Assembly (NCBI GenBank): GCA_000708835.1
Contig: DF237261.1
Coordinates: 41,865-105,864, forward strand
Direction of reading: 5' to 3'
DNA: 64,000 nt
From: Klebsormidium nitens
Taxonomy: Eukaryota > Plantae > Klebsormidiophyceae
Within the stretch, counting starts at the first letter, position 1; each line of letters begins with the position of its first letter. Position numbers and translations under genes: made by a program. The notes below the pieces were generated by a model that had not been told where the DNA came from, did not search any database, and saw only the letters and a list, made by a program, of their open reading frames with translations. Below, in pieces: positions 25,688 through 48,870 of this stretch.

Positions 25688-26543
25688 TTTCTGAGAATCT
25701 ATCCGTACCCTGTACTTGACTGTAGGTTCACCTATATGTCATACTCCTGCTCGTTTCTCCTAAGCCGCTCTGCTTTTCCCAGTCAGTATTTTACCTGCGT
25801 GAAAAAACACCTTCAGCGACAGAGAGCAACAGATTGAAGAAGCTACCTGGTGGCCTGTTCCTTGGGCCTCTGACTCAGACTTAGAGTTCGACTCTCAGGA
25901 AGTGCATGGACCTTGCAGCACCTTTATGCCAAAGTAGTTGTCACCTTGGAAGTGAAATGTGTCGACAAGGTACAATCTAGAGATGAGCAGGAAAAGCAGG
26001 AAACGTTCAGCTTACAACATGGGAAAAGCATCTCCTTCCTGACGACGAGTGTTAATGTTGGCTTCGTGTTGACCGGGTATCACTCTCTAAGTCCGAGTCT
26101 CGGACTCGCCCGTGTCAGAAGTCCTGCAGTCGCAGAATCTCGCTGAGCTCAGTCACTTGGCACGATGTCCCACCTCCTCAGTCAACCCACCCAACCTCCC
26201 CTTGGCCCAAGAATCTTTGGGAGCTGGCACCAACCAACTGACCAACGTAACGAGGACCAACCCCGTTCCGATACGTGTCCCCCCTGTTCGGTACGGCTTA
26301 TGCGCGCCAAGTCTCCGGTCGGCCAGGTTCCGAATCCGGACAACTTTCCTAACTGGCCCGTCCGTTTCCTGTTGCGCTCCGTCCGACTCGTCCAGTGCCC
26401 AAAGAGCTGCTTTTTTGGCAGTCGCGCTTCGTGGCAGGGTGGTCACGCAAGTCTGCCTGTTCTTCAAGACTGAGCTCAGTCAAGCTACATAATACAGACT
26501 TGTCCGGACGGCCAGGCTAGGTACGTGGCGCAGACTCCCAGGG

Positions 26544-26550
26544 TATAAAA
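26544..26550 (+). promoter_or_regulatory. TATA box (TATAAAA) upstream of the primase-helicase gene; deleted in copy A
   Basis: Copy B reads cccagggTATAAAAgcaaggtcacaatg; copy A reads cccagggaggtcacaatg. Confidence 0.5.
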
Positions 26551-26967
26551 GCAAGGTCACAATGGCGTCCCAATCATTCCAAGCAAGCGCAGTAGCCAGC
26601 AAGCAGCATTCTCTCCACTTCATCTTTGCACAACCCAGAAGCACCAGCTCGCTGTTCACCTTAGAAGACCGCGACAAGCTGTCTGATCTGCCACTTCATA
26701 CGGTGGCTCAGGGACTGCAGGCTGAGCTGGCCAGACGGTGCCAGAGGGCAGCTACGACATGGCCCAGCAATTGCGAGCAGCTGCAGAATGCAGGGCGTGC
26801 TTGCTATAGCTGCTGGCGTTTAGTTTCAGGCTGCCAATTGTCTAATTCAAGAGTAGTCAATGTCAAGCGGTCAGCAGCTTGCAGCTTGGGAGCACCTTCA
26901 TCACTCTGGCATAAGACAGCTGGCAGCAAAGTACCACTGAGTGACGCTGCAGAGTGGAGCTGCTGGC

Positions 26968-29900
26968 ATGGCGTCCGACCTGCGTTTCCACTGGGAGAGG
27001 TAAGCCATATTTTAAGGTGAGTGCACCAAGCAAGAGGCAAGGGAGGGCTGTTGCAGAGAGCAACTTCTGTCTGAGGGCTGGCAAGCAGGTCGGAGGCGGG
27101 CTCAGTCAAAAAGGAAGTCACTTTTCATTGGAGATCAGATGGCGACTTTTGACTGGGGTCGGCAAGCAGGTCGGAGAGCATTTTCAGTCAAAAAGGAGTC
27201 GCTTTCTTTTAGAGACCAGATGGCGACTTCTGACTGCTGGCTTTGAGATGGCTAGATTGTGTGAGGACTTGACAATCGCTGGGCTGCTTCGTGTAAACTA
27301 TTCCATGCGAAGCTGACTTGTACCTCAATATCTCTCCCTTTCAGTGGCTCGTCATCCCCTGAAGGATTAGGAAAGGGCATCGAAGGTGTTGAGTACACGC
27401 CTTGATCTGTTGATGGTTCAGACTCTGGACGCTTGCTGGCATGCTTCTTCAGCGATGGAGACTCTGCCAACATTCAAGGCCCGTCGTTCTACAAGGCAAT
27501 TAAGAATGAGGAGAGTTCAAGCCCGCTTCATCTGCCAAGAGGTCTTGCTGGTGTCCTGAGCAAGAAGAGGCCTGCTTCGGTAAGCTTGCTCTGTCTGGTT
27601 TTCTGCTCACCTGTGTCCGCCTCTTCTTCTTGGGAGGACTTTGAGATGTTGCTTGAAATGCCAGGCCTCTCGCACTTGAGTGATAGTTGGGTGACAGATC
27701 GCGCAGATTCATGAATCACTTTGAATGAGGTGCTTTGTAGCGGAGGACCTGCTTATAGAAACTCATTCCAGTTAATTAGCCAACCAACTGTGGCAATAAA
27801 GGCACCACTTGGAAGGAAGTCTAAGTGGTTCTTAAATCATGAGTTGCTCACTGCGACCCTGTATGTACAAGGTTATGTGCCTACCTCTCTATTCCCTTGG
27901 TCCTACGGGAGCAGTTTCAGAAAGCGGACGTGCTTAACGCCACCAGGCAACCCCGAGGTGAGAGAACAAGCTAGTACAGATTTTGGGTGACTTGTGATTG
28001 AGGGGTAAGGTACTTTGCAACTGATCCTTGAGCACAAAGAAATCGAGTAATAGCACCGCCCTGCCATTGGAAGCTCAGTGGGAACAAGCAAGTGAAGTCC
28101 GCTTCGGATGCTGATCGTATCTACTCAGCCCACATCGTGTTCGTGATCTGAATTTGTCCTCTTTGCGTTCTCAGGCGTCTCCGCATTGCGGCATCCCTGC
28201 TGGTCCTCAGAGCTTTGCGAGCAAGAGGGCTTCAGTCGAAACCTCAGTCGGCGAGCCTAACCTCGGTTCGCCAGTGCGGAAGCGAGGAGGGCTTGGATGG
28301 AAGCGTCCACGGGTCATCCTCTTGCAAGAGTTGGAGGAACAGCAGCAGCTGCCCCCGCGGCCCTCTCTTGAGGTGGGTCGTGAGCTTGGCACGGCCTCCC
28401 CCGTCTCCATTCTGCATGAAGTTTTCCTGTCTCGATTCTGCGCGTTCAGGACAGCTGTTTCCTGTGTCCGCCTTTTCGCGTGTGCAAGCTCATGAAGTGG
28501 AGTCTTGCAAGACGCCGTAGTAAACAACGCTGTTTTAGATCTCTTGCTCGGACCTTGTCGTCCGATTTGTGGGGAAGGCTAGCATTTAACGGTCACCCAT
28601 TTCTTCCTGGTGCAGGAGGAGAAGAGCCCACAAAGCGGTCTTGGATGCGATCAAGAGAAGGGGTGGGAAGATGATCGGCAGGCCCAGGTACAACGCCCGT
28701 AGTTCAAGAACGATTCTAGATCAGCGCGCAGACCAGTCGACTGAGTAGAAGTCACCATCTATGTAGCAATGATGTGGACATCAGCCTTTGTAGCCACTTG
28801 TGATACGGACCTTTTGCTGGTGCGTGTTCTGATGTAAAAGACCCATATACCGAGCATCTTACAACGATCTTTCAGTCCGGCCCCATCAATTTTGAATCCT
28901 CACTGCATCGCACTTCATTTGCATGAGGCCCCTTCCAAGCTCAGTGTGTGGTTTGAGTAGCTTCTGCTTCCGCTGCTCGTCGGACTCAGCCAGCCCCATT
29001 TGCTAAGAGCATTTTCTGCAACCTAGCATGAGGAGGAATGATGGATGCGTAAGAGGCCACAGCCGCCGTTTTGCTGAAGTAACCTGCGGCTGACCTTGCG
29101 ACCTTGTGACACCCAGACCATGCTCCCCTGTCGAGCTTCGGACATCGGCCAGTCGGTTGTTGACCTTGGAGACAGCCTCCCGCTGGCTGGGCGGTTCGAG
29201 GAAGGGCATGACGAAGCCGTCCCGCTCTCTTCCGCTCTGTACGCCTGTCCAAAACCCATGGCGTCCGAAGTTGCTTCGACAAGCGATGAGGAAGTCCTTT
29301 GTCAGGTGGGTTTGCTGGCAAAGTCATCAGAGCAGCAGTCAAAACTCTCCCTCTGATCTCTGATGATAAGCCACTCCTTTTTGACTGAACTTGCCTCCGA
29401 CCGGCTGCAGAGCCCCAGTCAGAAGTCCCTCTCTGATCTCTGATAATAAGCCACTCCTTTTTGACTGAACCTCGCCTCCGACCTGCTTGCGAAGTCAGCA
29501 GAGCTCCAGTAGAAGTCGCTCTCTTATCTCTGATAATAAGCCACTCCTTTTTGCCTGAATCCCGCCTCCGACCTGCTTGCGAAGTCATCAGAGCTCCAGT
29601 AGAAATCGCTCTCTTATCTCTGATGAAAAGCAACTCCTTTTTGACTGGGCCATCGTCCTTAGTAGCACCCTCTGATTGGTTGATATCAACCTGTCCACTT
29701 GTCACCGTTCACATACTCTCCAATCCCCAACTGCAGGTCGCCGCTGCCCCCGCCTACTCTGGGTGCGACACCCTTCGAGCGACTTCCTGCGTAGACGACT
29801 GTCGGACTGCCGATTTGCTGGTCGTAGAAGACGCGCTCATGGACGACGCAAGCAGTCAGCCGACCGAGTGCTTTGCAGCCCTCAAAGAAGAATGCGAGGC

Positions 29901-32900
29901 GCCAGCAAAAACCATCTTCGCCGCAATCATGAACCTGGCGGTAAGGCATCGTGCGCCCCGTGCATCCGCACTTGCATACCAGTTATGATAGAACTCCTTG
30001 CTCGCAATAAGGAACGTGCTTTCCCTCGAGAGGTTCATTTCATCGATGCCTCACCCTGGTCACCTTGACTTGGGATCTCAGATTCAAACGAAACTGGTCC
30101 ATGCTTGCTCAGGCTACTCCTGCAAAGAGGGTCAGTCTAGATGACAGAAGGTTGCTCCCCAAGAAATCGCACTCTGGCAGCATCTGTCGGATGGAGCAAT
30201 GACTTCTTAGAGGCTTTTGCTGAAGCAATCCGTTTGTGTTCAGGTGTCCCAGGGAGCTCCGTTCAATCTGGACGAGTGGGGCCAGCTGTGGTGCTTCAAG
30301 CTTGCCCCTGTTCTTGCCGCCTTCGAAAAGCACGCCGGACCGTGCCCCGGTGCCTTCATCGCTGCACGTGATGCTGGGGGGAATAAGGGGGCCAAGGGGT
30401 TCACCGTGTTCTTGAGCGCAATGGAGTTTGAGACGTATGTTGCGGGCGTCCAAGCGGCTGGCCTCACGCCGAGCCTGTACGAGGTCCTGCTCTCCTCTGA
30501 AGCATCCTGGCTCTACCTTGACCTCGACTACACGTCATCATCCGAGGTCCCAGGCGACTTTGACGAACGGTGCGAGCATCTGCACCGCCTTCTCGAGCAC
30601 TTTTGCACCCACGTCCTCAAGCTGCCCCCCGGCCAACTCGGCGCCCCTCAGATTGCCGCATCACCCGGAGTCGTTGGGGTTCAGGGGCACTTCAAGAGCA
30701 GCGTTCACGAAGTTTTCAAGGGGGTCTACTTCGAAAATTTGGAGGCGCGTGGAGAATTTCAGAAAGCCTTGCTTCACTTCCTCGACCACCCTTCTGCGAA
30801 CCTAGCGTTTAGCGCCGAGTTCGTGAGGTACACAAAGCCCGGCAGTGAGGTCATTGACAAGATCTGGGACGACTCAGTGTACAGCAGCAATCGGAACTGG
30901 CGCACTCTTGGTTCATGCAAGCTCCATGACCCACGGATCCTCTGCTCAGAGGAGGGCAGCTCAGAGCGCGCCTCAGACCACTTCATTGGCATCCGGGGCG
31001 GGTCCGAATTAAGCGGCGCGCTCCAGGTCGACGTCGATCTGCTGCGGGCTTACAACGCAGCGGCGGGGGTGGCTGGGAAGTCGGGGCTTAGACAGCGGCA
31101 AGTCCCTGCTCGTCGCAAGTGCCCCGACGATGATCTCGAACGGGATGAACCGATGCAGAGGGACCTTGGGCCGGAGGAGAGGGCACGTCTGCTGGAATGC
31201 GCTCAAGCAGACCACCCTGGGGCGACCCTGGGGGCGGAGAAGCAGACCCGCCCGGGCGTCTTCACCGTCAAGATCTGCGCCCCCCCCGGTAGTCGCACCT
31301 GCTGCCTTGCTGGACGCGAGCATGGTAGCGAGGGCAACAGGCAGTACTTGCTTTACCGGCGGGCGAACCCTGGAGAGGTGTTCTACCGCTGCTTCGCCCC
31401 ATCGTGCCAGTGAGTTCATTGGCAAATTTCTGCCTCATATCTGCTCTTGCGCAAGAAAGGCAGTCAGCGCCACTTCGATGTCTTTTAAGGAGAACTTGAT
31501 GATCCATTTTCATCAGAAGGCAGCGCCCTTTTCAGTCAAGATCGCTCCCCTCTTTCTATGATGAGACTTGGCCCGGATTGACTAGGTCTGTTCTCCCAGA
31601 AGCCGCCATGTCAGGGTGCAGTCAGAATTGCTCCCTTGTTTGAACAATGAGAGGCTGCCTTATTGACTGGATCTATTTCCCAAAAGCCGCCACGTCAGCG
31701 TTCCAATCAAAAACCGCTCCCTTGTTTCTATAATAAGAGTCGGGCCGGAGTGACTGACCCGCCCGCTCGAGGCCACCGCCACTTAGAGCCTAGCCTGAAA
31801 CGAACCCTTGAAACACAGGCCATGATCGAAGACTTTCCACTGCGACTAACGCAGGCTGATGTGCTTTGTGCAGGGGTCAGAAGAACGAACGGCTTCTCTC
31901 TCTGCGAGCGACCGACTTCGGTTGGAGCGAGGACTACTCCCTGTCAACGGGGATGCGGCCTTACCCCACAATGGAGATCCGCCCGGACCTCCTCCAAACA
32001 ATGCTAGTGAAGGCGAACAAAGGGATCGGAAAGTCGAAGGCCGGGACTACCTTTCTGGTGGACATGCTCCGGAAGAACCCCTCGGCCACCTGCGTCGTCA
32101 TTGCCAGCAACGTGGCGCTGGCTGACAAGCACCGCGAGGAGCTCCACCGGGCGGGCTTGACGGACTTCGTTCTCTACTCCGATGTGGAAGGCCCCATCAA
32201 GGACAGGAGGGTTGTCGTCTGCATCAACTCGGTGCCACGACTCTCTTCCCTCCGAAAGGACATCGTCTACATGGACGAGATCGACATGACCCTCAGCAAC
32301 CTGAACTCCGACGTCATGAAGGACCGTAGGATGGTCTTCATGGCCCTGCACGCGCTGGTTGAAGAAGCCCGTGTAGTGGTCGGGTTGGACGCCAACGTCG
32401 ATAGCGCACGCGTCCTCGAGTGGGTCCAGAGTATCCGCCCTGAGGCCGCCATGCACGCCATCCGCAACTCCGGAGTCCGCCCATCCAAGCGAACGGTGAC
32501 CATCCGACCGCTGCCTTTCGGGTTCAAGGGGGGCGACCGCTTCGCTCCCGTCATCGACTGGATTCTCGAGAAGGTGGACGCAGGGGAGAACGTTTGGGTG
32601 AGTTTGGAATGGAGCTGGCCGATCAGCTGTAAAGTGCTTCTTACAGACCTCAAACCGTGACGGATTCGCAAATTTTCGTCTCTGCGGGCCGTATCAGGGC
32701 TGAGCACCATCATGGGCAGTCTGCTTGTCATTGAAAAGGTCTTTTGCTTCGTCAAGCTCTTCTGAAGTACGAAGCAGACCTCGTGCCGCTCTTCCGGACT
32801 GCTAAGCCGTTGCCACGTTAGCAGCAAGGGGCCGATCGAAATCGCAAAGTTTAACGGAATAGATGCCCGCTCCTTTTCGCCCTTCAACAGCTGCATCCTT

Positions 32901-34887
32901 ATCGCGACGTCGCTTCTTTTCAGGTCGCATCGGCGAGCCGGTCCTTCATTGAACAGCTCGAGCAGGAGTTCCGGCTGAGATTCGCGGACACAGGCAAAAG
33001 CATTCTCACCTTCCACGGGGGGAAGACGGCATCGGGCGAGAAAGAGCAGCTTCGACAGGCGGTGGCCGACCCAGACAACCGCATGGTCGCCCACTGCCTC
33101 GGTTACTCTCCGACAGTCGGCCCAGGGGTCTCGATAGAGGTCAAACACTACCATCGGGGGGTAGGAATCGCCCTGAACCGGCCGAATGACGGCCCTGATG
33201 TCTTCACCTTCCAGCAGATGCTTCAAAGAGTGCGGGACGGGGGTGATATCGACATCTTCTACCTGGAAACCCCCCCGCCCAAGTTCGTGCCCACGACCAA
33301 AGAGGCCGTGTTCAGGACAATCGAACGGCAAGACGCCCAGCTACACGCGCTCGTGAAGCCATCGGAGGTTCTCGACTTCATGCAAGGGAGGGGCATGCAC
33401 GCTGTCTGCGACCGCACGTCCCCCACCTGCATCGTGTACGCCAACAACGTGCTGGCGCGCTATCGCAGCATGACCGACTACGTTGAGCTTCTGACGGAGG
33501 ACCTTGAGAAACAGGGCCTTTCAGTCGTGCACAGGTTGGGCGAAGTCGAAAGAGAAGAAGACGAGCATAGGCTGCCCGCGAGGCAGGGTCCCGATGCAAG
33601 CGAGAATCCTGACGCACGTCTCTCGGACGAGGAGTGGCGAAAGAAATTCTGCATCTCGCCAGAGCAGAACCGCGAGATTCTGAGCAAACGGGAAGCGCTT
33701 GAGGGTCTGAGCGACCTGGAGGAGAAGCAACGAGAGGTGTACTTCTATGCCAACGAGGTGTATGGTGTGGACTACAACCGTGTCAATCGTGCCTTCTTCG
33801 CGGACTTTTGCGACGAGGAGAAGAAGCACATGTACCTGAACTACAAGCGGTGAGTCATGCTAAATGCAAGCAATGAAGAAGTGGCATCCAAGTGCAATTC
33901 GCTCAGAGCAGCGGATGGAGAGGAGGCTGTGTTTCCTCTTGAGCTTCTGCTGACGTGGCAAGGCTCGGAAAGACTCTGATCCAGTCAATACTTGCCATCT
34001 CATTCATTAGAAGGGAAGTGAGAATTGACTGACCTTCCGCTCACATGGCAAGGGCTCGGAGCAAATCCGAGCTAGTCAAGATTCGCCCTCCCTTCAATAG
34101 AAAGGAAGTGGAGAATTGACTGACGTTCTGTTCTCTGAGCTAGTCAAGATTCGCCCTCCCTTCAATAGAAAGGAAGTGGAGAATTGACTAACGTTCTGCT
34201 CACGTGGCAAGGGCTCGGAGCAACTTTGGCCCCAGTCAAGAATCGCCCTCCCTTCGGATAAAAGGAAGTGGAGAATTGACTTTTCACTCACAGGCTTGGT
34301 AAGATTGAGTTCTATATCGGCCCCTTCCTTCAATGCCCTCTTCTCACAATTTGCCTCTCTTACCGGCCCTTACTTGCAGCTTTCTGCGGACGTCTTCGTT
34401 CGAGGAACTTCAGGGCCGCTTCGAGTCCTCCATGAGCTATGCGAATGATTGCCTCCCAACCAAGGACTACCTGGAAGAACGCAACCGGCCCAAGAACCTC
34501 GTCTTCTTTGCGTTCCGCCTTCTCGCTGCAATGCTCAACGTCGAGCACAACGCTCTTGATCGTTCTGCATCGGGAGCTTCTTATATGGTTGCCGAGAACA
34601 GCCTCCAAAACGCCTACTCCCTCCTCGTTGCCCCCCAATTGGCCGAGGCAAAGCGCTGGTACGGCATCAAGCAGAGCAAGGTCCAAAGGAACGAGAAGAA
34701 CGAACCAATCATGACGGATACGTTGAAGCGCAACGTCGTCAAAGGGATACTAAAGAAGGGCCTCGGGCTGAGCTTCGTGGATGTACCAGGCAAGAAGAGC
34801 AACAACGAGTTTGTGAGGCCCCACGAATTTAGCCCGGAGCTCTATAGAGAGGTCCATGCTACATATGGCAAAGTGCCTAAGTGCTAG
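26968..34887 (+). CDS. PrimPol-type AEP primase + Zn finger + UL9-like SF2 origin-binding helicase fusion, 9 exons: 26968-26999, 27345-27579, 28175-28372, 29117-29305, 29737-29940, 30244-31409, 31874-32597, 32924-33849, 34380-34887 (1394 codons; premature TGA at 27403; alternative in-frame ATG at 29120)
   Basis: All junctions are GT-AG and in phase. AEP motifs: LYLDLD, KSSVH, DDSVYSSNRNWR. Zn finger: C...H...CFAPSC. Helicase motifs: KANKGIGKS, YMDEID, GLDAN, YSPTVGPGVS and GPDVFTFQQMLQRVR, the last closely matching the herpes UL9 motif VI region. Confidence 0.85.
27103..27236. repeat. Palindromic repeat array R2 (2 units), intron 1 of the primase-helicase gene
   Basis: CAGTCAAAAAGG...CTTTTGACTG and CAGTCAAAAAGG...CTTCTGACTG, with linker gcaagcaggtcggag. 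Confidence 0.85.
29336..29647. repeat. Palindromic repeat array R3 (4 units, 80-90-bp period), intron 4
   Basis: cagtcagaagtc...ctgatctctgataataagccactcctttttgactg, with linker ctccgacctgcttgcgaagtcagcagagctc. Confidence 0.9.
31533..31756. repeat. Palindromic repeat array R4 (3 degenerate units), intron 6
   Basis: cagtca...ttgact units at about 31533, 31619 and 31704, with linker gccgccacgtcagc. Confidence 0.7.
33945..34285. repeat. Palindromic repeat array R5 (4 units, opposite orientation to R4/R6), intron 8
   Basis: agtcaagattcgccctcccttcaatagaaaggaagtggagaattgact is repeated, with linker ctgacgtggcaagg (reverse complement of the R6 linker). Confidence 0.85.
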
Positions 34888-34921
34888 ACTTGGACAGTCA
34901 GTCCAAAGAAGAGTAGTGACG

Positions 34922-35392: not shown

Positions 35393-35492
35393 GGAGCAAA
35401 TATACTTGTCAACCGTGAGAATAATTCATTCGAGCCAGTAGGTAGTCAAGCTGCTGGAATGCATGCACTTAGAAGTTACTTAGAAGTTGAGA

Positions 35493-36035: not shown

Positions 36036-36214
36036 ACCTCACCCAATGCACTTCCCTTCTTACAAGATTTTTATCAGCCGGCCCGATGCACTTCTAATGC
36101 AAATGCACTGATGACTACGCACAGCAAATCCTACCATTCAATAGAGTCACGAATAGTGCATTCAGCCAACCAATCAGATTGTGACACGTGGCATTTACGT
36201 TAGCACTTATGAAG

Positions 36215-37227: not shown

Positions 37228-37290
37228 AACGCGCTTTCAATTCGAGAAATAAAATTCTTAGGAGGTAGCAAGGGATCCAAAGCCTAGACC

Positions 37291-38647: not shown

Positions 38648-38854
38648 AAGCGCTCATCGGATTGAAAGCCATTCACAAAGGACTGGACCACTTGGTGAAT
38701 GATGCAGAAGTGCAGGCAATCAATACATGCAACTTTTGAAGCACATGAAAGCTTGTGCTTCAAGGCGGCAATCGTGATGCCACTCGCAGTGCGTTTGTCA
38801 ATGTCTATTTTTTTCTCGGCTTGAAAACAATAGGAGGCAAGCGGATTTGGGACC

Positions 38855-41695
38855 ATGGAATCCACGAAGCTGATTGGCGCTCTAGAGGAGTACGCACAAG
38901 AGGGTCTCTATGCTATACCAGCAAAGGCATCCCTTTGGAAAGACGGCACCAAGAAGGTTTTTGGGACCATGCCGCATGCCAACGGAGACTCAGCTATACG
39001 GTCTGGCTCCGATTGGAGTGCTTCTAGGGCAAGAATTCTTGAACACATTGAAACGAGAGGATACAACTTTCTTGCAATCAAGACCGGTGCTATATCCGAT
39101 TGCTTCGTCCTAGATGTAGACGTGAAGGACAAACAAGATGAGGATATCTTAGCTGGAATGCCCTACTGGCAAAGCTTGATCGAGGAGCACGGTGAGCCCG
39201 ACACTTTGAGAGCAACCACTGCCAGTGGGGGCCTCCATTACTACTTCTCGTTTAGTAGCACAATCAAAGAAGGGCTTGAATCCGGCAAGAATTTCGTGGG
39301 GCTGGATGTTGACGGTCAGGTCTACGGCATTGATGGTCGCGGTGAGGGGGGTATAGCATTCGCTCCACCAAGCACTCTTGGTGAAGGCAGGGAGTATCAA
39401 TGGAACATGCCGCCTAAACGGACCAATATCAAGGCCGCACCTACGTGGGTTGTCGACCTTGTCAATGCGTCTGCCATAATTGCTGGTCACACTGGCAGAT
39501 CGAACGCAACCACTCGAAGCGGGATCCAAGCAGTGCATTATCCAGAACCCACTGAGCACCATGATATCGAGACCTTCGCAGATGATGGAGACCTGAACGA
39601 GGAATCATTGGACACTCGAGAGGCTGAAGGGTCTGAACACAAGATTGCTGCTGCAATGATGAAGCTGCTAAGAGATGCTGGGTTAGATGAGAACGTTAGC
39701 TTCTCGGGGAAGGTTTCCTTTCGTGGACCTCTTGGTTCGATTTACTCCTTCACCTGCAGGGGGCCTAGGCGGTGTATTCACGGCCACCGCCACAACGGCT
39801 CAAACAACTTTCGACTCATCAAACGGGGATGGGTCGTGCTTTACCGTTGTTTTGGCGTAGACTGCTCAGAAAAGCCGCTCGAAGAGTTGGGCAATCTCAG
39901 CCTTGCCGACTCACTGCTTGATGCGAATCCCACAAAATTGCACCCAACTTTCGACCGTTCGGTCTTCCCAGACAATTGCAGAGCAATATCACAAGACGAA
40001 TGCGAGTCTTATTTGAATCTCATCAGACGCAACGTGATGCACCGCTACCGGGGTCTTGCGGAAATCTTCAGCGCCATATATGCCGTTGATGGGCGTATCC
40101 TTGCTGAGGGGAAGACTTTCCGGTATTGGAACGGACGAAGGTGGCTACTGGATGGTTCCTTTCACGTGCAATCCGTCTTCTCGAGCCACATCGCAAGGAT
40201 TCTGCGCTGGTACGAGAATCAGAGACTGGCAGCCTTTAAAAGGGAGATCTATAAGCTCGCAAAGGAGTCGGAAGAGTGGGGTTGCATACCGGAGGGATCC
40301 GAATATACGCTTCCGGAGTGGGCAACTCATCCGAAGAGCGAACAAGAAAAAGAAACCTGCCGTTGGGCGTGGAAGGCGGTTGCGACCACTTTGCCATACC
40401 CAACGCAAAAAGATCTCCCGGATCTGACGCGTTGCTCTGAAGTGCGCATCTGCCTTGAGTACGTTGTTAATTCGCTGCAGATTCAAGAGGAGCTTAACGC
40501 CCTGATGGACCTTGCCAACCCCTTTCTATTTGCATGTGCTAATGGCGTGATTGATACTACAACAGGACAGCTGCTCGCACCCCATCCGGCCCAGCTGTGC
40601 TCGCGAGCTTCAACGGTTGCCTTCCGTGGTATGCCAAGAAGCAAATCAAGGTTCGCCAGATTCTTGCTGGATTGCTTCAACGGCGACAAGCAAGTGCTCG
40701 ACTAGTATCAACTCTACCTTGGGTACTGCATGACTGCTGACACAAGCGAGCAGATCTTTTTGGTCAAACAGGGGGAAGGATCGAACGGAAAAACACTGAC
40801 AAAGGTTGCTTCGTTTGAGATCTTTGGGTCCTACGCAGTGGTCATGGACCGAGACGTAATCATCGAGGCTGGCGGCCGACGCAGTGCGGAGTCTGCATCG
40901 TCTCACGTCATGGCCTTAAAGGGGGCTAGATTGGCGGAATCAGACGAATCAGGCGAGAAATCCGTTCTTAACGAATCGACCATAAAAGAGTTGTCCGGAG
41001 GAGGCTCGATCACGGCACGAGAGCTCCAAGGTAGGCAAGAGACTTTCATGGTGACCCACAAGGCAATTCTAAACACGAACTACAAGCCGGTCATGGAGAA
41101 CGCATCATTCAGTCTTATTCGCCGCATGGCCCTTCTTCCGATGATGGTCACCTTTAAGTCTGCCGAGAGTCTGAATCCAAACAAATCAAGAGAGAAGGCA
41201 AAAGACTCCACTCTCGAAGCATACCTCAAGTCTGATGAAGGCCGAGAGGACGGGCTATCATGGATTGCAGCAGGAGCGAGCCGCTACTTCGAAATCAAAC
41301 GGGCAAAGCCAAGCGCCTTGGTTCTCGAGAAACGGCCAAAGGCTATGGAAGACGCACTAAAAGCTTACGTGAATGACGCTGACGTTGCTAAACGTTTCAT
41401 TGAAGAATGCTTGGAGTTCGAAGAGCTGCATCCCGGACAACGGGCAACCTGGCATTTGGCGGGGGGTGAGCGCTTGCAAGAGGCGTTTCAGACGTGGATC
41501 AAAGAAGAAGACGTGTCTAGCTCCATCACCGCAACAGCTCTCAAGAAACGAGTCGTGCTGTATGCCGATGGCGGCAACCATCAAGTTGCGACCGGTCGCT
41601 TCACCGACAAGAAGGTCCAATTAAGGGGGCAATTCAAAGGCCTCAGTGGTGTGCGGCTAAGGCCTGAATTCCTCGACAGCATTTCACTGGTGTGA
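38855..41695 (+). pseudogene. Bifunctional Prim-Pol primase + Zn domain + D5/P4-type SF3 helicase (947 codons) with one in-frame TAG at 40703-40705
   Basis: Prim-Pol motifs AIKTG...FVLDVD, TASGGLHYYF, IDGRGEGG..FAPPS; D5_N FACANGVID; Walker A GEGSNGKT, Walker B LAESDES, motif C LNTNYKP. The two track ORFs are in the same frame across D*YQLYLGY. Confidence 0.88.
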
Positions 41696-42110
41696 CCGGA
41701 GAGACGGGCCAACAGACTTGCAAGACGCTGAGCAGCGATCTGTGGGCGGCGGACCGCATACTTGTCATTTGGGGCCTCTTCATTGCCTTGCAGATCGACT
41801 TCGTCTACCACTAACATTGCAGACCATAAGTCTAAAAGTCTTATTTCTCAACTCTTTTTCTTTCCAGGTTTTTTCCAACCCCCCCTTAGGCACCTATGTC
41901 CTATAAGAAAAAAGATCCGCATTCGAGCTCTTTTGGACTTCTAGGCTGCCACCGGCATTTGCAGATCGGGAGCAGATCACTCGCTCCACTCATCACATGA
42001 TGCATGAGCTAGCTTCCACCAAAACATGTGCGCTATGCAACTCAATATGTAGCGCCAAAGATTGATTGAAGAGAATGGGCCAACTGGCCATGGCACTTGG
42101 CCAAGCAACG

Positions 42111-45100
42111 TCAATAACTTAGGAGGCAGCCCCGCACTGCCGGGGTCCAGGTGTCTGCTCTTCCGGCTATCCGTAGCTTAGGGTCATCGACTCTCCTTAG
42201 CCTCGCATTCCGCCCGCTGATGACGTTGGCTAGAATAACCATGAACGCACTCAAGCCGCTAAACCATGCAAGGACTTTGAACTTTACGAGGAATGAGTTG
42301 CAGCTCTCGACGGCGGACGTGTTGACCCAGCGCATGGCGTCGTAGTAATCTGTAAAAAGGAGACATAAGCAAGGTTGACACGTGGATCAAAAGCACGAGG
42401 CTCGCAAGAAGTAAGGTATGCTGCACATAATCAAGTTGCCTAAGCCTCGGCCACTCGAGTTGGGGGGCACTCAGTGTGCCCAATTCAGAATGAACAACTC
42501 TGGGAGGGAATTCCAGCGGCACACATGCTACACTGATCGAGATCGCTTTCCTGCTGCCCGGCAACAAGGCACGTGCCTTCAAAAAGAACAATCACGCTCA
42601 CGCTTCGCGAGATCTGACTTCGGCCTGCCCAGGTTCTCACCCGGATTAAACCCTGGCCCACACTTGTGAGCCTCAGCATCAGTTCGTTGGAAGTGAAATC
42701 TGCAAGGCAATGAAAAATATTGAAGTGTCCAGCTGCCGTTCGAAGCAGTATGCATCTAAGACTTGTGGCAAGGCGCTCGAGACTGTTCCCATGGACCTCC
42801 TACCCAAAAGTGCTCAGCCTTTTTTCGACCTGCCGCCCCCTGCAGTCTGCTACATTATGTGGCAAAACAGCTGGCGCCTTCTTGCGCAGATCATTCTGCC
42901 AGACCCTAGAGGCACTTGCATTCGAATCCAGGATGGAAGGGCAGCGCAAGGTTTTGCTCACCTGTCCACCAGAAAGCGCACGTCCGCAAAGAACGTGGGC
43001 TCTCGTCTCATGCAGTAAGCCTGGAGCTTGCAGGCGTTGTCGTAAATCAGGAACGCCGGAAGGTTTCGTCGGTGAGCCGCGTGTAGAGCACAGTAAACGG
43101 GTCCCGAGGGGACTCGCCCCGCAGCATCACGTGCCAACCGTAGATCACCCGGTGGGGGCAGCAGAACACAAACCCTCCCTTGGTGTGCTGTCGCAGACGC
43201 TTGGCAGACTTCACGCTGCTCTTGGCAGCGATCTCAGCGTCGAACTCGCCCACTGTGAGCCCGCTTCGGCAGCGATGTTCTTCCCGGCGGTCAACGGACC
43301 TCCCAAGCTCGTCCTCGAACGGCCTGTACTGCGGAAGAGGCCGCTTCTGCTCCCAACCCGGCAGGGGATAGCAACCTAGCTCTCGTTGCTCTTTACAGAA
43401 CGGATGGTCAGGAGGAAGAGCCTCGGCTTCAGAGCCGTCGGTCTCGAGCCCCAATCTGCCGTTCAGAAGCCGGAGCTCCGCCGGAGACAGAGGGTACTGC
43501 TGCGGGGCTGGCGGGGTCAGACTTTCGACTCCGGCCAGCAGGTCGTTGGCACGTGCCTCCCAGAAGCGGAAGACTTCTCGCTGCTCAGCGTTCGGAGGAA
43601 CTCCCTGCGTGCGAAAATCTCGGGCCAGGCTCACGCAGTGGTCTAGCCCTTCGATGGCCGAGAGCGCCCACCCTGCTCGATCCACACCCAGGCCGCACGC
43701 CCCCCGACCGAATAGAGTGAGGCGATAGAGGTGGTGCAGAGCGGGCATGAAGAAGTCTGGGAAGACGTCGCCGTAGTGGTCGAGCAGCCGCCGCAAAACC
43801 GGCGCATGCTCAGCCAAGGTGGCTTTGTCTTCGCCGGTTGCAGCGCCACCGAGGAGGAGCTTTCGCACGACGGCCAGCGCCCGTCCGTGCTGAATGAGGT
43901 TCGAGTCGTCCGAGACGGAGAGAGGGGCGCCCAGCCCGTAGAGGAGCTCCGACCACTTGCCGGGGCAGAGCGGGGGCCAGCGCGGATTCTCACGCAGCGC
44001 CTCCCTCTCGATTCCATCAAGGAGCTCGAACATGGATTGGTTCTTTGAGCGAATCTGGCCGGTCTGCTCCATCAGGATGCGCCGCCTCCAGTGAAGAAGA
44101 ACGGGGTCTGCATCAGCATCATCTGGGTCCGGCACGAAGTCGCTCACTGCTTCGACGTCAGCCCGCTCGAGCGCAACCTGCATGAGACACAAGGTACCGT
44201 CAGTACCCAGCGCAACGTGAGTTAAAAGTTGCTTCATTTGTACATAAGAATTCAGGCAACTTCTGACTGATGTGCCACGTCAGCGCTTCGTGCGACAGAG
44301 TCAGATCTCGCTCGCATCTCTAAAGAAGATCACGCGACTTCTGACTTATCATAGATGCGCGTCACAAAGTGCACTTGTGTGGTCAGGTAGTGACAGATTC
44401 TTGTCTAGCTTTTGTCAGATGTATATATGAAAGTCTGATGCAAAACCTAGATAGAGGAGGCGGCAGTGAGAAACAAGGATGCCGCTCTGGCCATGTACCG
44501 ACCACTTACCAGGAGCTCTTGGTACTCGATTGGAGCCAGGGACTTCCCAAGTTCAGGATCTCTCGGATGATGCCCACTGAAACGCGCAAGCAGCGTCCGC
44601 AGCTCAGGCTGGATCACAAGACGCCGCTTCATCCCCCGCCCCTCCAGAGACGCAGCGCAGAAGTTGACCCCGGCTTCCATGGTCTTCTCCACGTTAACGC
44701 CAGCAGAGTCTTGGCTCGGCGCAGTAAACGGGCGCACAGCTGCTGCGCTGGTCCCTGACAACCCACCCTTCTGCCGCCCCCCATCGGCACAAGCCAGGCC
44801 CGCGAGACCGTCGCACAGAAGTACCTGTCAGGGACAAGAAGGCGAATCGGAATGTCAAGCAGACCTCATGCACTGGTGACCCTAGCAACGCGCTGGCGGG
44901 GGGCTTCAAACTGAAAACAGGGACACGCCCTCTCGATGGGGTCTCCCTCCTCTGCAAAGACCCTGCAAAGCTCAGCGCTCAGTATCTCCGCACCAAGCGA
45001 TGCCTTTGAGCAAGCAAAAACTTCGACGTCTTGAGCAAGGGCACTGACCTTTGGATGCAGCCCACAGATGCTGCAACACTCCAGGATGGACCGTCCGCAC

Positions 45101-48100
45101 AACCTGAAGAAGCCCAGGCTCGCCTTGCGCCAGGTCTCTTCCGAGAGGAGCACCGCACTTGGTTTGTACTGCCGCCGGGCTTCCGCACAGGCAGAGATGA
45201 AGCCGTTGGAAGCTGAGCCAGACTCTTGAATGGATCGGAGCAGGAGTTGGCACGAGGCTTGAGTGACGATGACCGCTCTCGTCCAGGCAAAGAGGCCGAG
45301 GGCTTCACCATTGAAGTGAACCGTGTGTTTCTCGGGGCAGGTGCAGCAGAAGATGCGGACCTTCACCTATGGAGGAGGAGGGTTCTGATCAGAAAAGCCA
45401 GCATCAGAAAAGCGATCAACTTGAATCAAGGCCAGAGGGAGCGCGTGCCCTTTTTTACAAGCCCAAGTCAGAAGTCGCCATCTGATCTCTATAGGAAAGA
45501 GACTCCTTTCTGACTGACAGTGAGCCCGCTTTTCTGACCCGCTTGCCACGTCAGCAGAGCCGCAGTCAGAAGTCGCCCGTAAATTTCTATAGAAGAGCAA
45601 CTCCTTTTTGACTGGGGTCTGTCGCTCCCCGACCCGCTTTCCACGTCAGCAGAGCCGCAGTCAGAAGTTGCCCTCTAATCACTATATAAAAGAGACTCCT
45701 TTTGACTGACAATGAACCTGCCGCCCTGACCCGCTTGCCACGTCAACAGAGCCGCAGTCAGAAGTCGCCATCTGATCTCTATGAAAAGGTGACTCCTTTT
45801 TGACTGAGACCGTACGCTTAGGAGCCGTGACAGCAAGTCAAGCAGGCTTCACCTTATTTGCAACTCCTCCTTGATGCATCAAAGAGCACAGCCTATGCGC
45901 AATTGCAGTGCGGCTCTCTTAGACGTCTGTGCGGCCTCACCTCTTGCGACCACTGCAGGGAGTAGATGTGCGCGGATTGCCAGAGCCTGATCCATTTAGT
46001 CTTGCAGCGGGGAGGCGCTCTGGGGCAAGGGGCTGACAGGCACTCCATCGTGCTGAGCTCCGCGAAGTCCCGCGCTACCAGCTCACTGACCTTCACAGGT
46101 TGGCGCAACAGGGTGACCTCAGGGTCGTGGACATCCCAGCTATCCACCGGGCGCACCAGCTTGGGGATCTCGACCTGGACCGCCTCTGCCTCCATGGGAA
46201 GCACCACCGCAACGCGCCCTGACGCGCCATGGGTGCACGGCCTTGAAGGGCAAGCGCAGCTCGTGCACACCGGGACCATGACCTCGCCACGCCTTCCCAC
46301 GCCGACGCCACTGCAGCCCTCGACTTCTGAGTCCTTGCAGCTGCGCGCACCGTCTGCCACCATCGGCTCTGCTGCGTCGCGCTCTCTGGCCGCCCAGAAC
46401 GCCTTGCTCCTCCGCTTCACCCCTCCCCTCGCCCCACCAGCTTCCCCGCCGTCCACTTGCTCCGACCGAGCCCGCTTCCCGCTTGCAGACGCAGAGCTAC
46501 AGCACCTAGACGCACACGCCTCGCCGCCCAGATCGATGCCGCCAAACAGCCTAGGATGCTGCTTGCAGAAGCAGATTTCCCCCTTGCAGGTCGCCTCGTG
46601 GTGGCCGCCAATGACCAGCTCGAGGAGATACGCTTCTAGCTCTGCAGAAGCATCCACTGAGGGGGAGCCCTGGTCTCCAGCCGGACCTTGTGCACCAGCC
46701 GCGCACCTCTCATGGGCGCCACGCGCTGCCGCCTCCCCTGCCTCAACTTGCACATCACCTTCCCCTCGATAGACGGAAACAAGGGCCCGCTCGAGCTGCG
46801 CCTCCGAAAAGAGACACCCGCTCACCCTGTGAATGCCATCCGGGCGCTGCAAGGCTCTCTTCGCCTCTAGGATGTGGCTGCAGTCAGTTGTCTTTGAGCA
46901 ACCGCTTTGCCTCCCCTCGCAGTACCAGGGGAACTGCTCGCTGGCACCAAAGTGAACCATCGTCCTGTGCGGCGAGGGGGACGCTGCGTTCCAGTAGACA
47001 CCAAAGACTCTCTCTCCAGGTTTAGAGCAAGGTGCCTCAACCACTCTGGCGCCCCTCTGCAGAGAGATGTGGCTCGCTTGCCTTGGCCCCTCCAGCGCCT
47101 GCAGCGCGAGCTTGTGAACGCAGGGCGCTCCAAAGAATAGCCGCCCCCGATCGCAGGTGCAGCTTGCGGCCCCCGAGGTGTCCCAGTAAACTGTCTCTAA
47201 GAGAGCGCGCGCCTTGCTGGGCCGGCCAAGGGGCTTGGGCCTGGCGGCGTTGTGGTCCCAAGTCGTCGCCAGGTAGACAGAGCTGGTGGAGTCCTCCTCG
47301 CCGATGCTGTAGAAGACGCACTGTCCAGCCTTGATGCCCGCGAGGAACTTGGCAGCTTGAGCGGCGATTGTCAGCCGGCCTTCTGCATCGCGCGCGTCCG
47401 TTGACGAAGCACAAGGGGGACTCTGCACAAGGCGCATTGCTCAGTCAACTACTCGATGAGGCGCAATCCACCAGCTTACTGTAGGGCTTCTTTACTGCGC
47501 ACAGCTTCACCTCCAGCCCTGCTTCCCGTTCTGAAGACTTGCATTCAATGAATCAGCCCAGCTCAGCAAGTCAGCGGCAATACGTCTCCAATCTGCACAT
47601 CATTCACAAGAAGACTGCGGGAAGTGATTCACATTTTTGACAGTGAGAGGTGGCTCACCGCTGCTAGTGGCTTCCGTGCCGCCTCTCCCACTTTCCGGCC
47701 CCTGTTCAGTGCTGCTTCTGCTGCAGTACTTGCGCGGCGCCCACCAATTGCAAGCCGCGCCTCCTCCCCCTTGGCTTGCAGAGCGACAACGTCCTCGCCC
47801 AGCAACACCTTCACCTGGCGCCATGGCTCCGCAACTGCTGTGCGCTCAAACCACACCTCTGCTGGACCCACCCAACCTCTTCTTACAACAGTCGCTGCAG
47901 TGCTGGTGGTAGAAACGGGTCCAATGAGGTTCTTCACGCACTCCAAACACACGGGCTGCTCCTTCCTCTGACCTTTCACTCTTGAGCTCGGATCGGACAC
48001 TGCAAAACCCTTGAGCTCCTGACCTTTTCGAAAGTCTAGCTCGCAGCCATTGGCATTGGGCCTTATAAGACTCTGCTTGCAAAGTGCGCATTTGGAGGCC

Positions 48101-48336
48101 AAAGAGTCAAGTGACAGGAGCTTTGGATCCACCACGAAATCACCCCTGCTGATTGCTTTTAGAGTTGCCGGATGAAAGGCTTGCAAGAGAGCTGCAGAAG
48201 GGGTGCCAGCCGCTGGCGCACTTGCTGGTGCCAGTGGCACCTGCTCTCTCCCCCCGTCTGCTGTGCTTGTGCAGGCACTGGCGGACCTGCAGTTCTGGGC
48301 TCGGTACTCCGACTGCACTACATTCTGAGCTCGCAT
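42111..48336 (-). pseudogene. KDZ (Kyakuja-Dileera-Zisupton) transposase with Zn finger, SWIM and CxC-like domains, 7 exons: 48336-47659, 47422-45941, 45366-45049, 44824-44510, 44177-42962, 42699-42641, 42349-42111; 1-bp frameshift near 43065
   Basis: SWIM CTC...CVH; CCSICGLHPKVLLCDG; GGFVFCCPHRVIYGWHVMLRGESPRD; past the shift LPAFLIYDNACKLQAYCMRREP...VDRFH...HKCGPGFNP; NTSAVESCNS. All junctions are in phase once one base is restored. Confidence 0.85.
45466..45806. repeat. Palindromic repeat array R6 (4 units, ~96-bp period), KDZ intron 2
   Basis: cagtcagaagtcgccatctgatctctat...actcctttttgactg, with linker gacccgcttgccacgtcagcagagccg. Confidence 0.9.
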
Positions 48337-48429
48337 GGTTGGATCCTGGAAAGCTTTTGGAGGTCGGGGAATTATGCTGGTTATCGCATTCAGTTGCCTT
48401 GGGGGGTTTTTATAGGCGATTGGAACAAC

Positions 48430-48870
48430 CGGTTGAGCGTTCAGTCGAGACTTGGCCCTTAATGGGCTGAAAGGGCCTTTCCCCCGGTCGCGAACGCCCG
48501 GCTACGTAAGTCGGAAGCCTCCTGCCTGCTTACGTGGTTTGAGCTACGTGGTTTTTCCTAACCGTCTCAACCGCCGGGCCACGTAAGTGGGCCTCCGGCA
48601 CCGACTGAAGGCCCAATATCTAGCAGGGGGCTCCGGCCCCATATTCCTCTACGGCACTTGGTCCCTAGTTCCGTCAGATTGACGGTTTTCGCTGCAAGGC
48701 TCGCCCGCGGCGCTCAATCGACGCCGTCGATGAGTCATTCGGCACAAGCGCGCATCCTGAGCCGTCCAGATAGTGCCGTTCAACTGTTGGTGGCCAACTA
48801 AAAGGGGCGGTCTCGTAGGGTATTCAATCCAAAACCGGCCCGAGAGCGTCAAGCCGGTTCTTTGCCTCCG
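48430..48870. promoter_or_regulatory. Putative divergent promoter between the KDZ gene and the ATPase gene; four ACGT-core boxes and GGCCCA/TGGGCC site-II-like motifs
   Basis: ctacgtaag, ttacgtgg, ctacgtgg and ccacgtaag within ~100 bp; gtgggcc and ggcccaat. Position lies between two divergent starts. Confidence 0.4.

What the first reader, a model, noticed from the sequence alone, without database searches (positions are those of the whole stretch)
26200..48450. Candidate new class of large element: viral replication module + tyrosine recombinase + Zisupton-type transposase, without capsid
Seen: a contiguous ~22-kb block between host genes holds two primases, two helicases (SF2 UL9-like and SF3 D5-like), a YR pair, an MC1-like gene, ORFans and a KDZ transposase. 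One private repeat family is shared by both ends. Known: D5, YR and MC1-like genes are typical of Nucleocytoviricota/PLV-type viruses; KDZ enzymes are DNA transposases; transposon-virus fusions exist (Teratorn), as do YR-mobilised giant elements (Starships). Inference: this is a virus-derived replicon captured by or fused with a KDZ transposon and moving as one unit in an algal genome. I do not recognise this gene combination from any described element.
Basis: partly seen in the sequence, partly recalled or inferred. Interest (0 to 1): 0.92.

Follow-up and report, generated by a model that had tools for sequence, protein, structure and literature searches.

The report
Giant KDZ transposon carrying replication genes
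This is a 29-kb jumping gene in the alga Klebsormidium nitens that carries, besides its own cut-and-paste enzyme, plasmid- or virus-type DNA-replication genes and a recombinase but no capsid genes, a combination I did not find in the literature I could search.

Summary
The gene block is real, but it is the inner part of a larger unit. The window is Klebsormidium nitens scaffold DF237261.1. The element runs from 19931 to 48797 (28,867 bp), not from 26200.

- **Ends:** imperfect terminal inverted repeats match 16/18 in the core and 22/28 overall.
- **Full-length relative:** a 28,161-bp relative has the same ends and a perfect 8-bp target-site duplication, the length reported for Zisupton.
- **Gene content:** a multi-exon KDZ transposase gene, a convergent PrimPol–D5_N–SF3 helicase gene, one complete tyrosine recombinase with a truncated paralogue, small ORFans, and an arm with a UL9/CyRepA1-type SF2 helicase gene whose N-terminal primase assignment is weak.
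- **Conservation:** the KDZ–D5–YR order recurs at five other loci, including a clade only 27–49% identical in protein. dN/dS is 0.09–0.37.
- **Not found:** a capsid, packaging ATPase or PolB gene, or an MC1-like gene.
- **Repeat family:** the "private repeat family" is a set of internal tandem arrays, not the termini.
- **State of this copy:** it has no recognisable target-site duplication and one in-frame stop in the D5 gene.

Best reading: a giant KDZ transposon that carries a conserved replicon-plus-recombinase module. Giant KDZ elements with accessory genes are known; this cargo appears undescribed. It is a new variant of a known kind.

The parts
19931..48797 (.). Whole element, 28,867 bp (DF237261.1:61795-90661)
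   Evidence: Homology to the TSD-flanked relative starts exactly at 19931 (= L007:1183). Homology to three relatives stops at about 48791-48797. The relative is 28,161 bp long.
19931..19964 (+). Left terminus: 6 outer bases plus a 28-nt imperfect TIR arm (core 19937-19954)
   Evidence: The core matches the reverse complement of 48774-48791 at 16/18, and 22/28 over the arm. It is 85% identical over 61 nt to the left end of the relative.
48764..48797 (-). Right terminus: 28-nt imperfect TIR arm (core 48774-48791) plus 6 outer bases
   Evidence: About 230 nt of non-coding subterminal sequence (48559-48793) is conserved with L001 and L002.
19961..21944 (+). Left-arm segment A, one copy of an internal 2-kb duplication
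   Evidence: 82-92% identical to 26254-28325. A 31-nt subterminal motif occurs only at 19961 and 26254.
26254..28325 (+). Left-arm segment B, the second copy; it lacks the terminal 30 nt and so is not an end
29314..29647 (+). Tandem array of about 90-nt units. The same family also lies at 20777-20864 (-), 27063-27245 (-) and 45460-45807 (+). A related 68-nt family lies at 33975-34281.
   Evidence: There is no copy in the 35 kb of flanking sequence. Arrays of other sequence sit at matching non-coding positions in L003. Single-strand folds are not better than shuffles.
29120..34887 (+). Multi-exon gene: putative AEP primase part (about 30217-31413) plus UL9/CyRepA1-type SF2 helicase (about 31866-33853) plus a C-terminal part
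   Evidence: The K. nitens annotation has one 1237-aa model here with Herpes_ori_bp. Two helicase ORFs hit PHROG 4913 collinearly. In-frame GT-AG models exist in both copies. The AEP evidence is weak.
34922..35392 (-). ORFan, 156 aa
   Evidence: No family hit. A weak homologue sits at the same position in L006.
35640..36035 (-). Conserved small ORFan, 131 aa
   Evidence: 63-69% identical protein at the same position in L001, L003 and L006. No family hit.
36394..37227 (+). YRa: recombinase-like paralogue without the C-terminal catalytic part
   Evidence: hhalign against YRb gives E 8.6e-5 over 219 columns. All three copies aligned end at the same point, before the RH..H..Y region.
37291..38340 (+). 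YRb: complete tyrosine recombinase, 349 aa
   Evidence: R195, K238, R309, H335 and Y344 are conserved in 28 relatives. Phage_integrase is found in relatives. The PDB profile hits XerC-like 4a8e at 6e-4. The model has pLDDT 92, and its top folds are XerA, Cre, IntI and Tn1549 Int.
38855..41695 (+). PrimPol - D5_N - SF3 helicase gene (P4/D5 type); broken in this copy by one in-frame stop, with no frameshift seen
   Evidence: Relatives P0001, P0002 and P0005 are single ORFs of 949-971 aa.
42111..48336 (-). KDZ (Zisupton-like) transposase gene in several conserved blocks, with an N-terminal ORF, a SWIM-like finger, a CxC4 cluster, a conserved central region and the KDZ catalytic region. It is convergent with the D5 gene.
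   Evidence: CxC4 2e-4 and SWIM 0.019. The K. nitens models are 1307 aa plus 115 aa. The KDZ Pfam domain is found in paralogues P0053, P0014 and P0048, which align across this region. There are 0-2 possible disruptions that cannot be told from introns.
49230..64000 (+). Right neighbour: host P-type cation ATPase gene (start given; it runs on beyond the stretch seen in L005)
   Evidence: Cation_ATPase_N, E1-E2_ATPase, Hydrolase, Cation_ATPase_C.
7489..8373 (-). Left-flank host exon with an ion-transport domain
   Evidence: Pfam Ion_trans 8.9e-6.

Best explanation
The region is a giant cut-and-paste DNA transposon of the KDZ (Zisupton-like) superfamily, 19931-48797. Its KDZ transposase most likely acts on the imperfect terminal inverted repeats and makes 8-bp target-site duplications. 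That mechanism is inferred from the ends, the duplication and the literature, and was not observed.

Inside the ends, as a stable part of the family rather than a one-off capture, lie three things. The first is a P4/D5-type primase-helicase gene. The second is a tyrosine recombinase with a non-catalytic paralogue. The third is a variable left arm. In this lineage the arm holds a putative AEP-primase/UL9-type helicase gene. In another lineage it holds a second PrimPol/D5_N gene. In a third locus no such gene is seen, but that locus has no identified left end and may be truncated.

My inference about function is that the primase-helicase(s) and the recombinase serve a plasmid-like phase of the excised element: replication using host polymerases, and circle formation or multimer resolution. 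That would let a cut-and-paste element raise its copy number. The tandem arrays in the non-coding spacers are candidate binding sites; this is speculative.

This particular copy looks old. It has no recognisable target-site duplication, a 2-kb internal duplication, and one stop in the D5 gene.
For: - **Unit:** the order KDZ, then convergent D5, YRb, YRa and the small ORF recurs in L001, L003, L004 and L006 at 63-86% nucleotide identity. It also recurs in clade L011/L012, where proteins are only 27-49% identical. L009 keeps YRa-YRb-D5 up to the contig end.
- **Selection:** dN/dS is 0.09-0.37 wherever dS is not saturated, and dN is 0.15-0.5.
- **Ends:** the terminal 18-mer pattern occurs only twice in 64 kb, inverted, at 19937 and 48791. 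My estimate for a 16/18 inverted match anywhere in the window is about 1e-3. Conservation with relatives begins and stops at these points.
- **Target-site duplication:** in L003 the same ends are flanked by a perfect 8-bp duplication at equal offsets. Zisupton is reported to make 8-bp duplications (PMC12730594).
- **Transposase family:**
- **Host setting:** flanks are host genes, namely a P-type ATPase, an ion-transport exon and a TIR-NB-ARC-LRR gene next to L001.
- **Copy number:** there are at least 10 K. nitens gene models of this KDZ clade.
- **Precedent for size:** KDZ elements of 30-31.7 kb with accessory genes are known in algae.
Against: - The window copy has no target-site duplication: 2 of 8 bases match at the expected offsets. 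Only one relative supplies a duplication.
- The KDZ Pfam model does not hit the window's own short pieces. The family call rests on paralogues.
- No near-identical copies were seen; the closest KDZ protein is 88% identical. Recent mobility is therefore not shown.
- One K. nitens locus (L013) has a truncated KDZ remnant without D5 or YR.
- The role of the replication genes and the recombinase is inference only. No polymerase gene is present.
- All relatives come from K. nitens, from metagenome contigs that carry a plant-type resistance gene and a protein clustered at 90% or more with a K. nitens one, or from unnamed assemblies. The sample of lineages is narrow.
Confidence: 0.7

Rival explanations
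1. Passenger capture. This is a giant KDZ transposon that picked up replication and recombinase genes as cargo, like Pack-type or accessory-gene-bearing giant transposons. The cargo plays no part in the element's own propagation. It may instead act on the host or on other parasites.
For: Giant KDZ, EnSpm and Sola elements in algae often carry accessory genes of unknown function. The left arm is variable between lineages. No polymerase gene and no demonstrated origin were found.
Against: The KDZ-D5-YR core is kept in the same order across a clade split with 27-49% protein identity, and every gene is under purifying selection. Random cargo is not expected to persist like this. YR paired with a P4-type primase-helicase is a self-sufficient integrative-replicon pair elsewhere; that statement rests on my own knowledge of P4-like elements and Polinton-like viruses.
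Confidence: 0.15
2. An integrative plasmid- or virus-like replicon whose true integrase is the tyrosine recombinase. The KDZ gene is then a resident or co-opted transposase that is not responsible for the observed insertions.
For: YRb has all catalytic residues and a confident recombinase fold. YR plus primase-helicase alone forms the conserved left half of the core (L009). The window copy lacks a target-site duplication.
Against: The ends are inverted repeats. The one clean insertion has an 8-bp duplication, which is a DDE-transposase signature and the Zisupton length. The right end lies just outside the KDZ gene, and no inner end separates KDZ from D5.
Confidence: 0.1
3. A decayed fragment of an ordinary giant-virus or Polinton-like-virus insertion into which a KDZ transposon later jumped.
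For: K. nitens (as K. flaccidum) is reported to hold Phycodnaviridae-like core genes elsewhere in its genome (PMC5294986). D5-type primase-helicases and YRs are common in such viruses. The best solved-structure match of the D5 gene is a giant-virus primase-helicase.
Against: No capsid, packaging ATPase or PolB was found in the element, in its full-length relative or in the 64-kb window. There are only short ORFs and no family hits in the left arm and flanks. The same compact gene set with the same ends recurs at other loci. KDZ has no ends of its own. Two genes appear spliced. Nothing related is in IMG/VR.
Confidence: 0.05

Closest known systems
Giant KDZ/Zisupton transposons of algae (Zisupton-3_cRei, 31.7 kb, Chlamydomonas reinhardtii; KDZ families up to 30.3 kb in Ectocarpus)
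   Same: KDZ-type transposase gene of more than 1300 aa, terminal inverted repeats, 8-bp duplication (in the relative), size near 30 kb, additional genes inside the ends, and several copies per genome.
   Different: The papers I could read call the accessory genes mostly of unknown function. None mentions a primase-helicase, a UL9-type helicase or a tyrosine recombinase. No held paper contains KDZ, primase and transposon together. I could not inspect Repbase entries.
Teratorn (a piggyBac-like transposon fused with an alloherpesvirus, in fish)
   Same: The ends of a DDE transposon enclose virus-type replication genes, including a primase and a helicase, and the whole moves as one unit.
   Different: Teratorn is about 180 kb. 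It keeps the DNA polymerase and the capsid, terminase and envelope genes of a complete virus. Here there is no polymerase and no virion gene, the transposase superfamily differs, and a tyrosine recombinase is present as well.
Polintons/Mavericks, Polinton-like viruses and Tlr1-type elements
   Same: Integrating eukaryotic elements of 15-40 kb. Many Polinton-like viruses pair a D5-type primase-helicase with a tyrosine recombinase (my own knowledge; PMC4642659 is listed).
   Different: Those families are defined by capsid genes (major and minor capsid proteins, packaging ATPase, protease), and none was found here. Their integrase is retroviral-type or YR, not KDZ.
P4-like satellites and integrative plasmids of prokaryotes (YR integrase plus P4-family primase-helicase); cyanobacterial CyRepA1 plasmids
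   Same: The helicase part of the D5 gene matches the P4-family primase C-terminal domain (5e-28 to 5e-31). The SF2 helicase matches CyRepA1 plasmid Rep (8e-14). The YR plus primase-helicase pairing is shared.
   Different: They belong to a different domain of life and have no DDE transposase. Scores fall just below (TIGR01613) or far below (CyRepA1) the curated cut-offs, so the likeness is at the level of fold and family class, not membership.
Starships and Cryptons (YR-mobilised eukaryotic elements)
   Same: Large cargo-carrying elements (Starships), or elements that encode a tyrosine recombinase.
   Different: YRb has no DUF3435 or other Pfam hit of its own. The ends are inverted repeats with an 8-bp duplication. 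A DDE-type transposase is present and conserved.

Membership tests
KDZ (Kyakuja-Dileera-Zisupton) DNA transposons | Encodes a KDZ-type transposase (Pfam PF18758) | tested here: inconclusive
   Paralogue P0053 scores 33.3 bits against a cut-off of 26.6. P0014, P0048, P0041 and P0019 score sub-threshold. All of them align across window 42117-44183. The window's own short pieces give no hit.
KDZ (Kyakuja-Dileera-Zisupton) DNA transposons | KDZ-associated cysteine clusters (CxC) and, for Zisupton, a SWIM finger | tested here: inconclusive
   CxC4 scores 2e-4 (21.6 bits, cut-off 26.9). SWIM scores 0.019 (15 bits, cut-off 19.6). The same weak hits appear in relatives.
KDZ (Kyakuja-Dileera-Zisupton) DNA transposons | Terminal inverted repeats (Zisupton, Dileera) | tested here: met
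   16/18 and 22/28 in the window; 13/18 and 17/28 in L003.
KDZ (Kyakuja-Dileera-Zisupton) DNA transposons | 8-bp target-site duplication (Zisupton/Dileera; PMC12730594) | tested here: inconclusive
   A perfect 8-bp duplication flanks the L003 element. None is recognisable at the window copy, where 2 of 8 bases match.
Endogenous Nucleocytoviricota / Polinton-like virus | Capsid module (major capsid protein, packaging ATPase) | tested here: not met
   No such Pfam or PHROG hit for any ORF tested in the element, in the relative's left arm or in the flanks. All unassigned ORFs are 249 aa or shorter. Spliced or very short genes were not searched exhaustively.
Endogenous Nucleocytoviricota / Polinton-like virus | Family B DNA polymerase | tested here: not met
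   There is no ORF of suitable size and no hit.
Starship / Crypton (YR-mobilised elements) | YR (DUF3435 'captain' in Starships) as the sole mobilising enzyme; no TIR plus fixed-length duplication pattern | tested here: not met
   YRb has no DUF3435 hit. A conserved DDE-type gene, inverted repeats and an 8-bp duplication are present.
Teratorn-type transposon-virus fusion | Transposon ends enclosing a complete viral genome with virion genes | tested here: not met
   Only replication and recombination genes lie inside the ends. No virion genes were found (same calls as for the capsid module).
Tyrosine recombinase superfamily (for YRb) | R-K-(H)-R-H-Y catalytic set and a two-domain recombinase fold | tested here: met
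P4/D5-type primase-helicase (for 38855-41695) | N-terminal AEP/PrimPol domain, D5_N, SF3 helicase | tested here: met
   Pfam Prim-Pol and D5_N score above their cut-offs. The helicase part matches TIGR01613 at 5.3e-28 (97.8 bits, cut-off 108.7), PHROG primases at 4e-32 and a PDB primase-helicase at 2.7e-18.

The most novel reading that the evidence does not exclude
The family is a previously unrecognised kind of eukaryotic mobile element: a transposon-plasmid hybrid. A KDZ transposase moves it in and out of chromosomes. Its own primase-helicase(s) replicate the excised DNA with host polymerases. A tyrosine recombinase, with a non-catalytic partner, circularises the copies or resolves them. It would be a capsid-less counterpart of Teratorn and of the self-synthesising Polintons and casposons, and it would explain how a 29-kb cut-and-paste element multiplies.
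Probability: 0.3. Interest if true: 0.88.

Novelty: new variant of a known kind. Interest (0 to 1): 0.7.

Why it matters
How giant DNA transposons raise their copy number and tolerate their size is an open question (PMC6431247). Here a DDE-type transposon stably keeps replication-initiation enzymes and a site-specific recombinase under purifying selection, with no virion genes.

That places it on the poorly populated line between transposons, plasmids and viruses in a close algal relative of land plants. It gives a concrete family in which the transposon-to-replicon or replicon-to-transposon transition can be studied by comparative genomics.

It also warns annotators. D5-type and UL9-type 'viral hallmark' genes in streptophyte algal genomes need not mark giant-virus insertions.

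Tried and rejected
- **Left end at 26200:** rejected. That point is the start of an internal duplicate that lacks the terminal 30 nt.
- **The ~90-nt repeat family as termini:** rejected. The arrays are internal, the one inside the KDZ gene is absent from relatives at that spot, and the units do not fold better than shuffles.
- **MC1-like gene:** no hit in any ORF of 55 aa or more that I tested.
- **AEP fold of the first 'primase':** the AlphaFold model failed (pLDDT 37). hhalign against the PrimPol of the D5 gene was not significant. The PDB profile hit to human PrimPol reached only E 0.12.
- **First PDB profile search with three YRb sequences:** gave only chance matches.
- **Target-site duplication at the window copy:** tested for either candidate left end; none found.
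- **Left end of L001 and ends of L011:** not found.
- **Database scans that came back blank:** Metagenome contigs for KDZ relatives and for the predicted empty site of L003. This collection appears not to hold the samples concerned, so these blanks are uninformative. Also IMG/VR for D5, KDZ and two outgroup recombinases. The YR alignment was too diverse for that tool.
- **Look-ups that added nothing:** the exact window ORF and L008.
- **RNA genes:** no Rfam family and no tRNA in the window.
- **Splice model for the helicase gene:** many in-frame GT-AG solutions exist in both copies, so none could be singled out.

Full report
**Origin of the window.** A protein search with the ORF that starts at 38855 returned a K. 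nitens protein (KFL_003120140) at 100% identity. The look-up of that protein returned scaffold DF237261.1. Its stretch 70719-93559 is identical to window 28855-51695, so window base 1 is scaffold base 41865. The window has no N.

- Long ORFs are concentrated between 29 and 48 kb. The flanks have only short ORFs, as expected of intron-rich host genes.
- The gene at 38855-41695 has Prim-Pol (3.6e-17) and D5_N (5.3e-12) domains.
- Its C-terminal part matches the P4-family primase C-terminal domain at 5.3e-28, PHROG primase families at 4e-32 and, as a profile, a solved giant-virus primase-helicase at 2.7e-18.
- Relatives encode this gene as single ORFs of 949-971 aa. The window copy has one in-frame stop and no frameshift that I could see.
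- The ORF at 31866-32660 matches Herpes_ori_bp (5.4e-18) and the cyanobacterial plasmid Rep family CyRepA1 (8e-14).
- That ORF and the next one hit the same PHROG replication family collinearly. The K. nitens annotation joins 29120-34887 into one 1237-aa gene. In-frame GT-AG models exist in this copy and in a relative. I therefore read it as one spliced gene.
- The N-terminal 'primase' of that gene has only sub-threshold AEP hits (0.04-0.09), a weak PDB hit to human PrimPol (0.12) and conserved DxD, sxH and hD motifs. The structure model failed. That assignment stays weak.

**The recombinases.**
- A profile of 37291-38340 found 809 relatives.
- In an alignment of 28 of them, R195, K238, R309, H335 and Y344 are invariant or nearly so.
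- Some relatives carry Phage_integrase, and the profile hits a XerC-like structure.
- A model with pLDDT 92 matches XerA, Cre, integron integrase and Tn1549 integrase. This is a complete tyrosine recombinase.
- The upstream ORF, 36394-37227, is a paralogue (hhalign E 8.6e-5). In every copy aligned it ends before the part that holds the second arginine, the histidines and the tyrosine. It cannot be a catalytic recombinase on its own.

**The transposase.**
- On the minus strand, 48336-42111, lie several conserved coding blocks. One has a CxC4 cluster (2e-4) and one a SWIM-like finger (0.019).
- A search with the central 396-aa ORF found 45 relatives, nine of them K. nitens gene models. One of these carries the KDZ Pfam domain.
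- Rescanning gave KDZ hits in five relatives, one above the curated cut-off. These proteins align over window 42117-44183.
- The window's own short pieces do not hit the model.
- Compared with relatives, the catalytic region shows between 0 and 2 possible disruptions. I cannot tell these from introns without transcripts.
- No MC1-like gene was found.

**Is it one unit?** Look-ups of relatives returned other loci:

| Locus | Source |
|---|---|
| L001 (= L008) | metagenome contig |
| L002 = L003, extended to the left by L007 | metagenome contigs |
| L004, L006, L010, L013 | four further K. nitens scaffolds |
| L009, L011 = L012 | metagenome contigs |

- The contigs are streptophyte genome. L001's neighbour is a TIR-NB-ARC-LRR gene, and its YRa falls in one 90% cluster with a K. 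nitens protein.
- Window 29120-48793 is collinear with L003. Window 35690-48792 is collinear with L001. The corresponding parts are collinear with L004 and L006. Nucleotide identity is 63-86%, and the gene order is the same at protein level.
- L011/L012 keeps the order although its proteins are only 49% (KDZ), 33% (D5) and 27% (YRb) identical.
- L009 keeps YRa-YRb-D5 up to its contig end.
- Pairwise dN/dS is 0.09-0.37 for every gene where dS is not saturated.
- Divergence is mosaic. Between the window and L003, the AEP-UL9 arm has dS 0.4-0.8, KDZ has about 2, and YR and D5 are saturated. This points to exchange between lineages.
- The left arm varies. L006 has a 1101-aa PrimPol/D5_N gene model where the window has the AEP-UL9 gene. 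L001 has neither before a host gene, though its left end was not found.
- L013 is a truncated KDZ remnant next to host genes.

**Boundaries.**
- On the right, conservation among the window, L001 and L002 stops at about 48791-48797. The host P-type ATPase gene starts at 49230.
- It ends in a 61-nt match that starts exactly at 19931 = L007:1183.
- The bases 19937-19954 are the inverted match of 48774-48791: 16/18, and 22/28 over the arm. That terminal pattern occurs nowhere else in the window.
- In L003 the homologous ends (13/18, 17/28) are flanked at equal offsets by a perfect 8-bp duplication. I estimate about 0.002 or less for such a match by chance, given the flank positions I compared by eye. 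Eight base pairs is the length reported for Zisupton (PMC12730594).
- The two elements are 28,867 and 28,161 bp long.
- The window copy shows no duplication at the expected offsets. Together with the internal duplication, this suggests an old or rearranged copy.

**Repeats.**
- The ~90-nt family lies at 20777-20864, 27063-27245, 29314-29647 and 45460-45807, with a related family at 33975-34281.
- It is absent from the 35 kb of flanks.
- The arrays sit in non-coding spacers. L003 has arrays of different sequence at matching places.
- The array inside the KDZ gene is missing from relatives at that spot.
- The units do not fold better than shuffles. Their role is open.

**What is absent.**
- No ORF in the element, in the left arm of L003 or in the flanks matched a capsid, packaging ATPase or PolB family. 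The unassigned ORFs are small.
- IMG/VR scans for D5, KDZ and two outgroup recombinases were blank.
- There is no Rfam family or tRNA.

**Comparison with the literature.**
- Giant KDZ transposons of 30-31.7 kb with accessory genes are described in Ectocarpus and Chlamydomonas.
- The review of giant transposons does not mention KDZ, and it treats a primase-bearing transposable element only as a possibility.
- No held paper combines KDZ, primase and transposon.
- NCLDV-like core genes reported in K. flaccidum are a separate matter.
- I therefore file this as a new variant of a known kind. The mechanism of insertion is inferred from the ends and the duplication. The role of the replication and recombination genes is inference only.

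- One search printed per-piece tblastn coordinates for the window's ORFs against relatives.
- My first notebook entry quotes ORF bounds from the ORF listing that coincide with an interruption of a gene. After that I printed only counts and outer bounds.
- One search used an 18-nt degenerate search pattern made from the two terminal arms.

Noticed in passing
window 20250-20549 and 26554-26853: A 300-nt block is 100% identical between the two copies of the internal duplication, which are otherwise 75-92% identical. It overlaps an ORF with no family hit. This may reflect gene conversion.
   Followed up: partly
L006:11827-12898 (K. nitens DF237433.1): A 1101-aa PrimPol/D5_N gene model sits where the window has the AEP-UL9 gene, convergent with the homologue of the 156-aa ORFan. 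It looks like a non-orthologous replacement of the second replication gene.
   Followed up: partly
L008:12821-15241 (= L001:1-2421): A TIR-NB-ARC-LRR gene lies next to one element copy in a Klebsormidium-like metagenome contig. It confirms that these contigs are host genome. The adjacency itself was not explored.
   Followed up: no
window versus L003, whole element: Divergence is mosaic. The AEP-UL9 arm is 76-84% identical in nucleotides (dS 0.4-0.8), whereas YR and D5 are 63-67% identical with saturated dS, and KDZ is about 70% identical. The window's KDZ is closest to L006 (82-86%) although its D5 and YR are not.
   Followed up: partly
L013:1-2901 (K. nitens DF236987.1): A truncated KDZ remnant at a scaffold end is followed within 3 kb by host genes (a CDK inhibitor and a PANTS-like gene), with no D5 or YR.
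   Followed up: yes
L003/L007 (L3ext coordinates 8642-9040, 11312-11696, 12726-13087, 14161-14453, 21942-22210, 22904-23395, 24654-24979): Almost every non-coding spacer of the relative holds its own ~100-nt tandem array. Two of the arrays are inverted copies of each other.
   Followed up: partly
window 18092-18159, 12273-12629, 63685-63872: Short tandem duplications in the host flanks, unrelated to the element's repeat family.
   Followed up: no
window 36394-38340 versus 42111-48336: GC content differs sharply within the element: 46% for the YR pair and 59% for the KDZ gene, against 51-53% in the host flanks.
   Followed up: no
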